Below are positions 44,801 through 50,800 of a DNA stretch of 64,000 bases, piece after piece (the first letter of the stretch is position 1; each line of letters opens with the position of its first letter). Both the position numbers and the translations under genes were made by a program. The stretch lies in the NCBI GenBank assembly GCA_964252035.1, contig OZ176200.1, one strand, 5' to 3'. Source of the DNA: Podarcis erhardii (Eukaryota). The notes beneath the pieces are model-generated. The model ran no database searches. It was not told the origin of the DNA and was given only the letters and a program-made list of their open reading frames with translations.

Positions 44801-45859
44801 ATGCAACTTCTGTAGTCTGGCCCTTTCAGATTTTCTAGTGTTTCTGATTTTGAGAGTATAGTGGGCTTTGTTTTCGTGGTTTATTTTGTATGTAGGTAAG
44901 TGTCTGGATTTATATTAGTCCAGCTGCCTGGCTGTACACAACTGATAATATTTAGACTGCATAACACGCACCAGGGAGTGTGGGTTGGAGAGTGAGAATA
45001 CTGATTTAAACCTGTTTGCTGTAAGAGATTCTTTGTCAACTTGCAGAATTGTGCTGCAGAATACAATGGGGTTGTTATTCTAAACTTTACTCTGGGATGT
45101 TTTTCATAATCTGCTGAATTTCCAAGGTGGCTCAGTGTTAATTTACTATAGTTTCAGATTTAGAGGAAGGGAAGGCTCCATGATTTTCATTGTTTATAAA
45201 TCATGAAATGCAAACTCGGAATAATCAGCTCTGGATAACTATTTTTTTAAAGGCTATTATGTCTCTCTTTCTGTCCCATTTCTGGCCTATTTGAAAGCCC
45301 TCAGAGTTCTTTTGTCAGTTGACCAAAGTGGAGCTCACTTCTCAACCCTCCCCCCTTCTTATAAACCTTCTGATATAGGCTCAGTGCCAGGCATTATAGG
45401 CCCTAATATATGACTGGGCACAAAGATATAAAGTTTTTTTGGGGAGGGGTCTTTTAAACTTAACTTCATTTGAGAGGTGGGTTTCCTGCTCTTAGGCTTC
45501 TTTATTCTGAAATCAGCAAATTTCAGCAAAGTTCTACAATACTGCTTTTGTGCAACTAGTGAGTCATTACTATACTATGGACGCTACTACTACTACTACT
45601 ATTTCTTTTTCTTTTTTTCTGCAACTGTTGCAATCATAAAAGAATTATGTGAATCTCAGGCTTTCCATGAAAAAAATTTCTGATGTCCTGTGACCATGAG
45701 ATTATGTAGATTTTTCTATGGCAATTGTACACATGCTTGCTTGACAGCAGCACCCATTGATCTTGTATCTGAATAGTCACATTCCAAATAAGGAACTCTA
45801 GTCTGGCACGGAAAAACCTAAGCTGAGAGTCTTGTGATTCCTTAAGTACCATAACCTTT

Positions 45860-45955
45860 CATGAAGAGGAGTCTTCATAACTAACCCATCTGATGAATGG
45901 GACTCTAATCCATGAAAGCTTCCACCACAACAAACCTGTTGGTCCCTAAGATGCA
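45860..45955 (+). mobile_element. Degraded Penelope-like element terminal fragment with a decayed hammerhead motif
   Basis: CTGATGA(45890)...GAAAGCTT(45914-45921), followed by aaacctgttggtccctaagatgc, similar to the tail at 46700-46735. Confidence 0.6.
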
Positions 45956-45975
45956 ATGAGAGTTTTCTGAGGCCC

Positions 45976-46638
<663 letters not shown>

Positions 46639-46663
46639 TAAGTTTTTACAAACATGTAAGCAT

Positions 46664-46701
46664 GTATCTGAAGAAGTGTGCATGCACACGAAAGCTCATA
46701 C
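46664..46701 (+). ncRNA. Minimal type-I hammerhead ribozyme motif (Penelope-associated)
   Basis: GTAT-CTGAAGA-A-GTGTGC/AT/GCACAC-GAAA-GC-TC-ATAC: stem I GTAT/ATAC, intact CUGANGA and GAAA core, perfect stem II, palindromic AGCU stem III, UC cleavage site. Confidence 0.75.
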
Positions 46702-46760
46702 CAAGAACTAACTTAGTTGGTCTTTAAGGTGCTACTGGAAGGAATTTTTTTATTTTGTTT
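46667..46760 (+). mobile_element. 94-bp Penelope-like element terminal fragment
   Basis: 10-bp TSD taagcatgta (46657-46666, 46761-46770). Hammerhead motif followed by ...ttagttggtctttaaggtgctactgg, typical of reptile PLE ends. Confidence 0.8.
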
Positions 46761-47674
46761 TAAGCATGTAAGTACTTGAGTTACAAAGTGAAAGAAATTG
46801 TGTAGTAGTTATTCATCAATCATTTCTTTTTTGAACAATCAATTTGCACAGTAAAGCTGCTTTGCAGTACTGTACTTATTTTTTTCTTATTTGAACAAGA
46901 GTTTTACATTTGGGTCTTGCACTAGTTGTTTAGTAGTTGTTTAGAACAGAGAATTTCTTTCTCCTATACTACTATCAAATGTGCAACAGTCCTTCTCCTG
47001 TCACCCACCCTGTCATCTCTTATTATAGAACATAATATATATATTTTTAAGTTTCAGTTTTAAAAATTGAAACGATTCATGATTAACTTCTTGGTTATCA
47101 TTTGTACAGGGTATTAACTTTAATAATTAAGCCATCAAAAATCCAATATAAGCCCCTACATACTCAACATTCCTAATGGATTACAGCTGCAATCCTATGT
47201 GCACTTACCTTTGAGTAAGTACCATTGAACTCAGCGAATGCTTTTGAGTGGACAAGAATAGCATTGCACTCCATGCCCCCCGTTCATCTGTAGGCTTTAG
47301 CATGGGGACAAGCAAAAAGCGTTAGGTACATGATTCCAAAGAAATCTGTAGATCAGGAAAGCAGTTTTGCTTCTGGCATTGCCTTTTAATTAGCTAAGGA
47401 TAACTCCTGGGGGTTATTCTGATATGTCTTATGAAAGGCAGTGCATCCTTCAGAGAGAGGTGCTGTTGCTTTTTGCTGCACCTGGTCTTGTATCAGTTTT
47501 TACAAAGACTTCCATTTTTCCACCAGCATAAAACTGGAAAAAAAATGTTCCATCTCTTTTCTGCCTTTCTAGTGAAGCCTGCTGAGGTGTATGAATTGCC
47601 TGCTCTTCTCACCTGCAGCCAGATGACTAACACAGGACAAAGAGCAGCTAGCTGAGCAATGTGGCCAGACTTAA

Positions 47675-47827
<153 letters not shown>

Positions 47828-50800
47828 TAAGCTGCATTATTATGAATGATTTATCACAGTAGGAAGCCTTGTTGGAGAAGGAGGAAAAGATTCTATTCCT
47901 GGATTTCGGTTGCCAACATTTAGTCCTGGCGTTCTGTGCCTTTAGGATCTGCATGGTAATTTGAAATTCAACAGGCAAAGCTTTTCTCAGACCTAGAGTG
48001 CTAATTTTTTGTGTAGGTTTGCCTATGGGGTGAGATATGGTGAATAAGAAGAGCAGAGTTTCTGCACCACCAATGTGGCATTGGCTAAGAGATTTGCCCG
48101 CATCATTTAGCAAAGTGCTTTCTTGTTTCTTTTTGTTTCTATCCTTCTTACTTTATGCAGATTTATTTGACATCAGCACACTGATTCAGTTAATTAATCA
48201 GTTAAAACAACTGAATCAACTAATGTAATTGGAGCAATGCAGTAAGGGACTATTCCATTGGAAAGAAATATGAAGCAGAAATGGACAGAAAAATGCAGAA
48301 GAACTGGAGGGTGCCACTTGATACCATCTTTTCCAGGATTCTTTTTCTGGAGATTTTTACCTTTAGCAAAATCTAGCTTAGTTCATCTTCACTGCAATGA
48401 GGGTAGAATTCTAGACACTGACTTGTGCTTATAGATGGTATTTTTTTACTTGAGTTGAAGAATTTTTGCGCACACTAATTTCGCATGCAATGTTTTGTGG
48501 CGTTTCCCAGTTTGCAATGAATATGGCTTCTTCCCTCACTCTTTTTTACTGCTGGAGTGTGTTGTTCTTCCAGACCACACCGTTAAGAGTTTGGGTTATG
48601 CCCTGAATAAAAAACACTTTTGTATCCAGTGCCAAATTCAACCAAATACTGGATGGATAAAAGGCAGTATCATCAGATGCAAATATTTCCCCAACAGGAG
48701 ACTGCTTGAAAATAAACTTTATAGTGGGAAAGTATTTTGGTCTGTGTTTTCTTTGGTGCGCTCAAATTCTTGACTTCAGAATGGCTTTATAGGACAATCT
48801 GGCTTGGAATTTCTTTCCGTGGAAAAGGTTACTGCTACTTTTACTTCTTATTTTGATTCTGACTAAGTGTGTGGAAGGGATTCTTTTTATCAAGATGGAA
48901 ACCACACACTGCAGTTTTTTAAGCGCCCAGGCTCCTGTACAAGGGGATCAGCAATTGTAGCAGTGGGTTCCAGAGGCTAATTCTTGGTTGCTACAGTTGC
49001 TGGTTCTTTCCTAGGTGGTCTCCTATGACTTTAGTGGCTGCATGAGAAGCTGAAACCCAGCAGGTAGAGCTCTTCCCACCACTGTATCTGCACACTGAGG
49101 AAAAACTTCATCTGTGCTGAATTTTTGCTAATCATGCAACTGTTTAAAAGCAGAAAGGCTCTCTTGGATAATAAAAAGTAGTCGGTGCTTGCAGAGGGGA
49201 GGAAGCATGTAACAAATTAGCCAATTTACCTTTCAGTTAATCTTACATGTCTTATCTATCTTGGCTTGCATATTTCTGTGTGTGGTCAGAGATCAAAGAC
49301 ACGTAGCTGGAGTTCAAACAGCTGTAAACCTTGGAAGTTTTTCATGTGATTAGGAGGGTGCAGTCACAACTGGAATCTCATTCATTTTCTTGTAGTATAG
49401 AATTGCAAGAGCGTGCAGATATTTATCTGTTTATATAAGAAGCATTCATGCAATAAACCATGGTTGTATCACCTTGGCAGTACAGTTCACTATTGACAGT
49501 TTACCTTTAATTAGTTGATTACGCAAGTCCAAGTTAAATGACCTTTGAAGTTTGTTTCTCCCAGTTGAATAGGATCTTACCAGATCTTGGTCAGGTTTCC
49601 CAGGAAAGGGGACTAGTTTTGGGCAATGGGGATGCCATGACTGACTGTTGAGGGCAAAGTGTTCTTGCTGCCAAGTTACAGGTGGGTGGTGGGCAGACAG
49701 ACAGAGGTGCGTGGAGTGGGAGCTGCATTAGGATTGGCTGGTTGAGCAGTTGAGTGGAGAGCAGTTCCTAGAAAGGGAAGCAAATGGCTGTGTTTTGTGT
49801 CAGCTCTGACAAATGCATTGTAACCAGCAAGGCGTTGAAATTTTACTTAGTGCCAAGCTCATTGTTCATCATGTGCCCTCTCTGGACATGTGGGAAAATA
49901 TAAATGTAGAAAACAGATAACTTTACTTTGAGTCAGGAAAGGGTGGGATTCCTTTGCAGCTCCTTAAATATCTCAGTAAAGTTTCTGGATGGCAGCTCCT
50001 ATTATAGTTAGCCCTTGGACACTAAGGGCATGAAGCTTTCCTTCAGTTTGCTCTGTATTGGTTTCCTTTTGCGTTGTGAGTGTGCCAGGGCCAAACCTTT
50101 GCCAAATGGTCTCTGTAGCACGGAACTGGAGCAGCGAAGACCACCCAAGGCAGGCAGCCTTCTTACTAAGAATACCCTCAACGTCATCCCCGGGCTTCCA
50201 CTGTAACAGGCAGACTATTCCTAGCTGCTGGATGGAACATAATGAGGCTTTATTTAACTTCAATACATAGTATATTTATACACTTTGTGGCTGTTCTATA
50301 ACCTCTCCAATTGTGTCCTCCAGCAGCACGCAGTAGTACATTGATGCAGATCCCACTTGCGTCAAACATCAGCTCTGCTGAAGTTTATTTTCTCTTTAGC
50401 CTGATAAATGCAGATAGGTGCAAAAATATGCATAACCCTCAGTTTTGTTGACCACAATTGTGTGGATTAGGACATTGCCTATACACAACTGCATATATTT
50501 TTGGTAATATATTCTGATAACAAAAGTAGAAGCTTTGTTGCATTTGCAAATGTATGGCAGGGAATTAGATGACTGATGGAGACGGGAAGAAAAACCACAC
50601 ATTGTATCTGGTTTCTTTCTAATATTTTTTTTTTTTAATAATATTTATTAAAGTTTTTTAAACAATAAACAAAAAACATACATAATAACATAGTCTTTTC
50701 AAATTTCCACATTTCATTCTCCTCTTTGGACTTCCTCACATCTCTTATTCCTGCATTCTGAACTCACAAATTTTGCTAGCAAATTATTTACTTGTTTCCA

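What the first reader, a model, noticed from the sequence alone, without database searches (positions are those of the whole stretch)
46657..46770. Intact minimal hammerhead ribozyme in sense, 30 nt downstream of a SLC25A22 splice donor
Seen: all core nucleotides (CUGAAGA, GAAA, UC) are present, with a 6-bp stem II, palindromic AGCU stem III and 4-bp stem I, inside a 94-bp PLE fragment with a 10-bp TSD. Three of the four 5' stem-I bases (GTA) come from the host target site, so the insertion site happened to preserve the fold. The extra A after A9 has precedent in the CChMVd viroid hammerhead. Established: PLEs carry such minimal hammerheads, which cleave mainly as dimers. Inference: cleavage after 46697 in nascent pre-mRNA could affect splicing or expression of an essential carrier.
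Basis: partly seen in the sequence, partly recalled or inferred. Interest (0 to 1): 0.75.

Follow-up and report, generated by a model that had tools for sequence, protein, structure and literature searches.

The report
Penelope retrotransposon hammerhead on a splice donor
The hammerhead-ribozyme motif is real but is a standard part of a very abundant lizard Penelope-like retrotransposon; this young 118-base copy landed exactly on a splice donor of a mitochondrial carrier gene and duplicated it, and the ribozyme itself is most likely silent here.

Summary
The minimal hammerhead motif is at 46664-46701, with the predicted cut after 46697. A structured descriptor finds 1 site where 0.01 is expected by chance. 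It is not a lucky fold. DNA contigs and RNA reads of this lizard group show a very abundant repeat whose copies start at 46663/46664 and end at 46751-46761. The four stem-I bases GTAT therefore belong to the element, not to the host.

A close relative (organism G) has the empty site. Exactly 130 bases are missing, and 12 of them fit on either side of the gap. This duplication is the exon end plus GTAAGT, so the insertion sits on the 5' splice site and has duplicated it.

The insert is 118 bp: 20 bp of target-like filler plus a 98-bp Penelope-like element (PLE) end module. The motif matches published PLE minimal hammerheads, which do not cleave as single copies. No Rfam family matches. A local hairpin competes with the hammerhead fold. 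Family RNA reads show no pile of ends at the cut site.

This scan had already noted many such hammerheads elsewhere in this genome. Verdict: an ordinary new copy of a known kind. The duplicated splice donor is the more interesting feature.

The parts
46512..46637 (+). Coding exon 2 of a mitochondrial glutamate-carrier-like gene (SLC25A22-like). It ends ...AAGCAT, directly before the donor GTAAGT.
   Evidence: Translation of 46513-46635 hits Pfam Mito_carr at 1.5e-9. The frame runs into ATG TAA right after the exon. Neighbouring exons lie at about 37987, 47765 and 59608. The SLC25A22 name rests on recalled peptide similarity only.
46632..46643 (+). Target-site duplication, left copy: AAGCAT|GTAAGT. 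This is the last 6 nt of the exon plus the first 6 nt of the intron, and it is the authentic 5' splice site.
   Evidence: The organism G contig joins 46631 to 46762, skipping 130 bases, with 12 letters fitting either side (table 5). The two 12-mers are identical.
46644..46663 (+). 20-nt filler at the 5' junction (TTTTACAAACATGTAAGCAT). It is absent from the empty site and lies outside family homology. It is an imperfect re-copy of the target and holds a third donor-like site, CAT|GTAAGC, at 46656.
   Evidence: empty site; family homology starts at 46663/4. Origin by template switching or microhomology is an inference.
46664..46761 (+). 98-nt terminal module of an abundant Penelope-like retroelement family. 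It runs from the family's usual 5' boundary, just before the hammerhead, to the 3' end, which is the reverse-transcription start site without the 'tail'.
   Evidence: summed contig depth is about 1-2.7 million against about 12-19 in the flanks. Loose ends lie at 46663/46664 and at 46751/46757/46760/46761. Other genomic copies show head-to-tail and opposite-strand joints.
46664..46701 (+). Minimal type-I hammerhead motif. Predicted cleavage is between 46697 and 46698. Stem III exists only as the AGCU palindrome, so it depends on a dimer.
   Evidence: The features match the PLE minimal hammerhead described in PMC4209133.
46762..46773 (+). Target-site duplication, right copy. It is a decoy 5' splice site identical to the authentic one from -6 to +6.
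45886..45969 (+). Older, diverged relative of the same module in the upstream intron. It has CTGATGA (45890-96), a different 5-bp stem II, GAAAGCTT and the shared GTTGGTCYYTAAGRTGC block. No stem I can form.
   Evidence: Contig depth there is near single-copy at 90% likeness or more.

Best explanation
This is a young, lineage-specific 118-bp retrotransposition product. It consists of the 98-nt end module of an abundant Penelope-like element (PLE) of this lizard group plus 20 nt of junction filler. The module runs from the element's usual 5' boundary, just upstream of its pseudo-LTR hammerhead, to the internal site where PLE reverse transcription starts.

The insertion went into the 12-bp target AAGCAT|GTAAGT, which is the 5' splice site of coding exon 2 of an SLC25A22-like gene. 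Because the target-site duplication regenerates that sequence on both sides, the exon kept an intact donor. Two decoy donors (46656 and 46768) were created downstream, and their use would read straight into a TAA stop.

The hammerhead is the family's standard minimal, dimer-dependent motif. As a single intronic copy without a partner or the element's protein it is most likely catalytically silent. Any effect of the insertion on the gene is more likely to come through donor competition than through RNA self-cleavage.

Shown here: the motif, the family boundaries, the empty site, the TSD, and the filled state in the window and in organism A. Inferred: silence of the ribozyme, the transcription-start origin of the 5' boundary, the origin of the filler, and any splicing effect.
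For: - Motif and its chance level.
- Empty site in organism G: a 1342-nt contig with 19 other letters, 130 bases skipped and 12 fitting both sides.
- Filled site in organism A: a contig covering 46739-47900 with only 2 differences (both, tables 5 and 8).
- Family boundaries: longer copies continue upstream of 46663 with a shared sequence that starts with TATA about 30 nt before 46664. Another 51-58 contigs per run start at 46664 with varied A/T-rich flanks.
- Copies end at 46751-46761, or continue into GACTACGGCAGACCAACACGG... (table 7).
- Tandem and inverted joints occur in other copies, which is a PLE hallmark (tables 5 and 5c; PMC8557442).
- The architecture matches Poseidon_Ac of Anolis: a GAAA-NN-UC hammerhead at the pLTR/ORF border, then an AC-rich reverse-transcription start about 85-92 nt after the cut site with an optional 30-40-bp tail.
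- Arguments for silence: no monomeric stem III; the HHR-like fold is -6.8 kcal/mol against a competing hairpin of -10.7 kcal/mol built with the filler.
- Published data: a single PLE minimal hammerhead shows no detectable cleavage and dimers cleave weakly (PMC4209133). The Anolis PLE hammerhead cleaves only with its protein, and no RNA-seq ends are seen at its cut site (PMC11167929).
- In two RNA runs with family depth of about 500-590, no begin or end pile at 46697/8 reached the tool's threshold (table 6).
- The three donor-like sites and the immediate stop.
Against: - No locus-specific RNA was seen. Depth was zero on the exons and on unique intron sequence in both RNA runs. Exon reads may have been filtered as human-like. 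So neither donor use nor absence of cleavage at this locus was observed.
- Random-primed RNA-seq is a weak detector of 5'-OH and cyclic-phosphate ends.
- The family is transcribed on both strands and seems active, so a partner RNA or the PLE protein could be present in some cells.
- The isolated 38-nt motif can adopt the HHR secondary structure at near-MFE energy.
No longer copy lies in the window.
Confidence: 0.78

Rival explanations
1. One reading: the hammerhead is active in the nascent SLC25A22 pre-mRNA, as a homodimer of two transcripts or with another family RNA. It cuts after 46697 and lowers or changes splicing and expression of the carrier.
For: - The core is complete and stem I is 4 bp.
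- The AGCU palindrome allows a double hammerhead on paper, at -11.1 kcal/mol.
- Family RNAs are present.
- Intronic ribozymes can tune expression, as for Cpeb3 (PMC10919898).
Against: - The double hammerhead is far less stable than the alternative dimer, a 14-bp stem-II duplex at -30.6 kcal/mol.
- The local hairpin with the filler competes with the fold.
- PLE minimal hammerheads are inactive alone and weak as dimers (PMC4209133). The Anolis one needs its protein (PMC11167929).
- Slow hammerhead cuts in introns leave splicing intact (PMC2995048).
- The upstream relative at 45890 cannot supply stem I. I checked the pairing by eye: 2 of 4 pairs form.
- There is no end pile at the cut site in family reads, and the insertion is not conserved.
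Confidence: 0.05
2. The insertion matters, but through splicing rather than catalysis. The duplicated donor at 46768, and the weaker one at 46656, compete with the authentic donor. A fraction of stop-containing, decay-prone transcripts would result in species that carry the filled allele.
For: - The donors at 46638 and 46768 are identical from -6 to +6, each matching 8 of 9 positions of CAG|GTAAGT. The site at 46656 matches 7 of 9.
- No other site matching at least 7 of 9 positions lies in the 1.1-kb intron.
- An in-frame TAA lies at 46639-41.
- The predicted fold pairs the authentic donor (46634-39) with the filler (46652-57).
- From general knowledge: with duplicated 5' splice sites, the one nearer the acceptor is often favoured.
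Against: - There are no RNA data at this locus.
- The filled allele is carried by the reference genome and by organism A, in an essential-looking gene, so any loss must be tolerable.
- Exon-definition signals favour the authentic site.
Confidence: 0.3
3. The 98-nt unit is a solo monomer of a separate non-autonomous 'non-LTR retrozyme' that spreads through circular RNA made by hammerhead cleavage, rather than a run-off copy of a PLE transcript.
For: - Head-to-tail joints of the unit exist elsewhere in the genome (table 5c).
- Reptile retrozymes with short consensus lengths, derived from PLE pLTRs, have been reported (bioRxiv 10.64898/2026.07.22.740005).
Against: - The tandem joints lie at 46751/46761 joined to 46664, with 1-6 extra bases ending in G. 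This is end-to-start, as expected from template switching at an RNA 5' end, not from rolling-circle copying.
- Few or no copies begin at the cut site 46698.
- Longer copies continue on both sides into shared element sequence.
Confidence: 0.12
4. The motif is a chance match with no biological origin.
For: A loose core pattern alone matches 9 times against 9.08 expected. No Rfam family matches.
Against: - The structured descriptor finds 1 site against 0.01 expected.
- The motif sits in a high-copy family.
- A diverged relative at 45890 keeps the core with a covarying stem II.
Confidence: 0.01

Closest known systems
Minimal hammerheads of Penelope-like elements (Cervera & de la Pena 2014, PMC4209133; Lunse, Weinberg & Breaker, cited in PMC6765202)
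   Same: - Type-I layout with a complete core.
- A short 4-bp stem I.
- An unpaired base 5' of stem II.
- Stem III reduced to a tiny palindrome, hence dimer-dependent.
- Found mostly as single, dispersed, truncated copies, with tandem and inverted arrangements in the family.
   Different: - Stem II is 5 bp with a tetraloop (a 14-nt perfect palindrome), not the 7-8 bp quoted for schistosome families.
- No activity data exist for this family.
Poseidon_Ac (PAc) of Anolis carolinensis and its protein-assisted hammerhead (PMC11167929)
   Same: - A lizard PLE.
- A hammerhead with GAAA, a 2-nt palindrome centre, then UC (ACGU in PAc, AGCU here).
- An AC-rich reverse-transcription start downstream of the cut site with an optional 30-40-bp tail, which explains the 3' ends at 46751-61 and the continuation seen in other copies.
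- Unprocessed RNA is the substrate for insertion, and no RNA-seq ends lie at the cut site.
   Different: - There is no nucleotide similarity beyond the core when compared by eye with the published consensus.
- In PAc the ORF start overlaps the core. Here the ATG in stem II runs into a stop after 9 codons.
- Cleavage has not been tested here.
Conserved intronic ribozymes of amniotes (HH9/HH10 hammerheads, CPEB3 HDV-like ribozyme; PMC10919898)
   Same: A self-cleaving-ribozyme motif lying in sense inside an intron of a protein-coding gene.
   Different: - Those are conserved across orders, fold as monomers and are shown to cleave.
- This one is absent from a relative about 1.5% diverged, lacks a monomeric stem III, and does not match the Rfam hammerhead families, HH9 and HH10 (named from memory) being among them.
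Animal non-LTR retrozymes (PMC7229834; bioRxiv 10.64898/2026.07.22.740005)
   Same: Short hammerhead-bearing units related to PLE pLTRs, found as monomers and tandem arrays.
   Different: This locus is a solo unit with a TSD and an end-to-start boundary pattern. No circular RNA evidence exists. That preprint reports retrozymes as depleted from introns.

Membership tests
Hammerhead ribozyme (general) | Conserved core C3 U4 G5 A6 N7 G8 A9 / G12 A13 A14 / A15.1-U16.1 / H17 | tested here: met
   All positions are present at 46668-46697, with one extra A after A9.
Hammerhead ribozyme (general) | Three helices around the core within one molecule | tested here: not met
   Stems I (4 bp) and II (5 bp) form. 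Stem III cannot form, because A15.1-U16.1 would close a 2-nt loop. Only an intermolecular AGCU:AGCU helix is possible.
Hammerhead ribozyme (general) | Match to a curated covariance model (the Rfam hammerhead families; from memory, Hammerhead_1, _3, _II, HH9 and HH10) | tested here: not met
   No hit at gathering score on the whole window. No hit at E<=10 on 46600-46800.
Hammerhead ribozyme (general) | Site-specific self-cleavage | not testable with these tools
   The only indirect evidence is that no pile of read ends at 46697/8 reached threshold among family RNA reads (table 6).
PLE minimal hammerhead (Cervera & de la Pena 2014) | Short stem I (4-5 bp), an unpaired base 5' of stem II, and no or a tiny palindromic stem III | tested here: met
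   GUAU/AUAC, A46675 and AGCU, compared with the description in PMC4209133.
PLE minimal hammerhead (Cervera & de la Pena 2014) | Longer than usual stem II (6-8 bp) | tested here: inconclusive
   Stem II is 5 bp plus a tetraloop as a hairpin. The 14-nt palindrome could give a longer intermolecular helix.
Penelope-like element insertion | Family shows tandem (pseudo-LTR) and inverted arrangements, an optional 30-40-bp tail at the 3' end, and a TSD | tested here: met
   Head-to-tail and opposite-strand joints, two classes of 3' end and a 12-bp TSD, compared with PMC8557442 and PMC11167929.
Penelope-like element insertion | Parent element encodes an RT plus a GIY-YIG endonuclease | not tested
   No longer copy lies in the window, and no eukaryotic genome search was available. 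Earlier notes of this scan assert the link, but I did not check it.
Conserved functional intronic ribozyme | Presence at the orthologous site in related species | tested here: not met
   Organism G has the empty site; organism A has the filled site.
Non-LTR retrozyme | Tandem hammerhead units giving circular RNA joined at the cleavage site | tested here: inconclusive
   Tandem joints exist elsewhere, but they are end-to-start with extra bases (table 5c). This locus is a single unit. Circular RNA was not tested.

The most novel reading that the evidence does not exclude
A species-level presence/absence polymorphism in which a Penelope-like mini-insertion hit the 5' splice site of an essential mitochondrial glutamate carrier gene. 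It survived only because its own 12-bp target-site duplication rebuilt the donor. Carriers would now express a measurable fraction of decoy-donor, stop-containing SLC25A22 transcripts. A further possibility is that the element's protein-assisted hammerhead cuts between the authentic and decoy donors in cells where the family is active.
Probability: 0.2. Interest if true: 0.45.

Novelty: new member of a known kind. Interest (0 to 1): 0.27.

Why it matters
As a ribozyme it adds little. PLE minimal hammerheads are known and abundant in this genome, and they are probably inactive as single copies.

The locus is more useful as a clean natural example of how a retroelement can land on a splice site of an essential gene and be tolerated. 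The target-site duplication regenerates the donor. Filled and empty alleles in close relatives allow a direct test of duplicated-donor competition.

The read pile-ups also give base-level boundaries for a short hammerhead-to-RT-start module. This agrees with the internal-initiation model proposed for the Anolis PLE.

Tried and rejected
- Rfam at gathering score and at E<=10 gave no hammerhead family. These models evidently do not cover minimal PLE motifs, so this does not argue against the motif.
- The loose pattern CTGANGA...GAAA...TH is uninformative: 9 matches against 9.08 expected. I replaced it with a structured descriptor.
- blastn of the insert against the window found no second close copy.
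- Searches for the family's upstream and downstream flank sequences in the window found none. The RT-encoding parent therefore could not be examined.
- A cis heterodimer with the relative at 45890 was rejected. Stem I would have 2 of 4 pairs, and that copy has no stem I of its own (by inspection).
- RNA evidence for donor use and for cleavage at this locus failed: zero reads on the exons and on unique intron sequence in both RNA runs. The tool warns that conserved exon reads may be filtered, so this says nothing about expression.
- Lunse et al. (PMC5785218) is not held. I cite it only through the review PMC6765202.
- A findings search by sequence and by splice/TSD words returned nothing.

Full report
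**Observation**

The + strand at 46664-46701 reads GUAU-CUGAAGA-A-GUGUGCAUGCACAC-GAA-AGCU-C-AUAC. This is a complete hammerhead core:
- C3 to A9, G12 to A14, A15.1 and U16.1, and C17 at 46697.
- A 4-bp stem I (46664-67 with 46698-701).
- A stem II of 5 bp closed by CAUG.
- One extra A (46675) between A9 and stem II.
- A stem III reduced to the palindrome AGCU.

A loose core pattern is no better than chance: 9 matches against 9.08 expected. A descriptor that also demands stems I and II finds only this site in the window, and a mean of 0.01 sites in 200 dinucleotide shuffles. Rfam reports no hammerhead family at gathering score or at E<=10 on 46600-46800.

A second, diverged relative lies at about 45886-45969 on the same strand. 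It keeps CUGAUGA, GAAAGCU and a downstream GTTGGTCYYTAAGRTGC block. It has an unrelated 5-bp stem II, so the stem covaries, and no stem I.

**Gene context**

- The segment 46513-46635 translates to a Mito_carr segment (Pfam 1.5e-9).
- Short peptide words place further coding exons at about 37987, 47765 and 59608 on the + strand.
- The peptides match what I recall of SLC25A22 (GC1).
- The exon ends ...AAGCAT, followed by GTAAGT at 46638.

**What the reads and contigs show**

I laid two raw RNA-seq runs (organism H) and Logan contigs of two DNA runs (organisms A and G) on 45800-47900 at 90% likeness or more.

1. *Empty site.* A 1342-nt contig of organism G covers 46360-46631 and 46762-47827. It has 19 other letters and 8 gaps. 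It skips exactly 130 bases, and 12 letters fit on either side of the joint. This is an empty site.
   - The target-site duplication is the 12-mer AAGCATGTAAGT at 46632-43 and 46762-73 (identity checked).
   - The insert is 118 bp (46644-46761).
   - The 12-mer is the last six exon bases plus GTAAGT. The element inserted on the splice donor and duplicated it.
2. *Filled site.* A contig of organism A covers 46739-47900 with only 2 differences. It crosses the 3' junction, so that genome is filled, like the window.
3. *High-copy family.* Summed contig depth jumps from about 12-19 in the flanks to about 1-2.7 million over 46652-46793.
4. *Family boundaries on the left.*
   - Many reads and contigs continue upstream of 46663 with a shared sequence (TATAGAAGG...CTGTTTCAG).
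   - Another 51-58 contigs per DNA run begin at 46664 with heterogeneous A/T-rich flanks.
5. *Family boundaries on the right.* Copies end at 46751, 46757, 46760 or 46761, or run on into GACTACGGCAGACCAACACGG....
6. *Consequence for stem I.* GTAT, the 5' strand of stem I, belongs to the element. The 20 bases at 46644-46663 are neither family nor empty-site sequence. They look like an imperfect re-copy of the target: ACAAACATGTAAG-CAT against ACAAGCATGTAAG. I read them as junction filler from template switching, which is an inference.
7. *Arrangements elsewhere.* Other genomic copies show head-to-tail joints (46751/46761 joined to 46664, with 1-6 extra bases ending in G) and opposite-strand joints.
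8. *RNA.* Depth was zero on the exons and on unique intron sequence, so there is no information on this locus. The tool warns that conserved exon reads may be dropped.
9. *Family RNA.* Family reads cover the element at about 500-590-fold on both strands. No begin or end pile at 46697/46698 reached the tool's threshold.

**Fit to the literature**

- Cervera & de la Pena (PMC4209133) describe PLE minimal hammerheads. They have a short stem I of 4-5 bp, an unpaired base 5' of stem II and no real stem III. They occur mostly as single copies of truncated elements. Single motifs show no detectable cleavage, and dimers cleave only weakly.
- The review PMC6765202 summarises the dimer requirement.
- For the Anolis PLE Poseidon_Ac (PMC11167929):
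  - reverse transcription starts internally at an AC-rich site;
  - an optional 30-40-bp tail lies between the two start sites;
  - the hammerhead cleaves only when the element's protein is added;
  - hammerhead mutants insert normally;
  - no RNA-seq reads end at the cut site.
- The published Poseidon_Ac consensus shows the same GAAA-NN-UC layout (ACGU there, AGCU here) but no other nucleotide similarity by eye.
- Tandem and inverted copies and tails are PLE hallmarks (PMC8557442).

The 98-nt unit here fits this picture. It runs from the family's usual 5' boundary, about 30 nt after a TATA block, to the first RT start site, and it lacks the tail. Earlier notes of this scan on other DNA of the same genome (s1-234774, s1-234773) reached the same reading of a fixed start just before the ribozyme. 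My pile-up data agree on the boundary. The transcription-start interpretation remains untested.

**Is the ribozyme likely to act here?**

- The isolated 38-mer can take the hammerhead secondary structure: -6.0 kcal/mol against an MFE of -6.8.
- In its genomic context, GCAUGUAU from the filler pairs with half of stem II in a -10.7 kcal/mol hairpin, which wins.
- A domain-swapped double hammerhead of two molecules scores -11.1 kcal/mol. The dimer MFE, dominated by a 14-bp stem-II duplex, scores -30.6.
- The upstream relative at 45890 cannot serve as a cis partner. By inspection, stem I would have 2 of 4 pairs.
- Even if a slow cut occurred, hammerhead cleavage inside an intron left splicing intact in the exon-tethering experiments. 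Only fast ribozymes abolished splicing (as reviewed in PMC2995048).
- The insertion is absent from a close relative, so it is not a conserved regulatory device like HH9/HH10 or the CPEB3 ribozyme.

**What may matter instead**

The locus now has three donor-like sites:
- 46638, CAT|GTAAGT, matching 8 of 9 consensus positions;
- 46656, CAT|GTAAGC, matching 7 of 9;
- 46768, CAT|GTAAGT, matching 8 of 9 and identical to the first from -6 to +6.

No other site in the 1.1-kb intron matches at least 7 of 9 positions. Use of either downstream site reads ATG TAA immediately after the exon. Whether the decoys are used could not be tested here.

**Verdict**

The motif is real and far beyond chance. It is an ordinary new copy of a known kind, the minimal hammerhead of a Penelope-like element. 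This scan has already noted many of these elsewhere in this genome. The new and mildly interesting fact is that a young, presence/absence-variable insertion sits exactly on, and duplicates, the 5' splice site of an SLC25A22-like exon.

Noticed in passing
window 46638, 46656, 46768: There are three tandem donor-like sites, CAT|GTAAG. The first and third are identical from -6 to +6 because the TSD spans the exon/intron border. Any use of the downstream two reads into TAA at 46639-41.
   Followed up: partly
window about 46010-46400: A very abundant SINE-like repeat, with summed contig depth up to about 640,000 and RNA reads on both strands. It ends about 110 nt before the acceptor of the same exon, so the exon is boxed in by two repeats.
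   Followed up: no
window 45886-45969 (+): An older, diverged relative of the PLE hammerhead module in the upstream intron. The core is kept, stem II has a wholly different but still pairing sequence, and stem I is lost. It is near single-copy at 90% likeness or more.
   Followed up: partly
other genomic copies laid on window 46664-46761 (table 5c): Head-to-tail joints between the unit's 3' end and its 5' start carry 1-6 extra bases that always end in G. This could be a reverse-transcribed cap, which would support a transcription start at 46664.
   Followed up: no
window 46634-46657: The predicted fold pairs the authentic donor GCAUGU (46634-39) with ACAUGU of the filler (46652-57). This small hairpin could slightly mask the real 5' splice site.
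   Followed up: no
family flank just upstream of window 46663 in longer copies (table 7): The shared upstream sequence ends in a pyrimidine tract plus CAG directly before the hammerhead, so it resembles a 3' splice site. Some PLEs are known to carry an intron in the pLTR next to the hammerhead.
   Followed up: no
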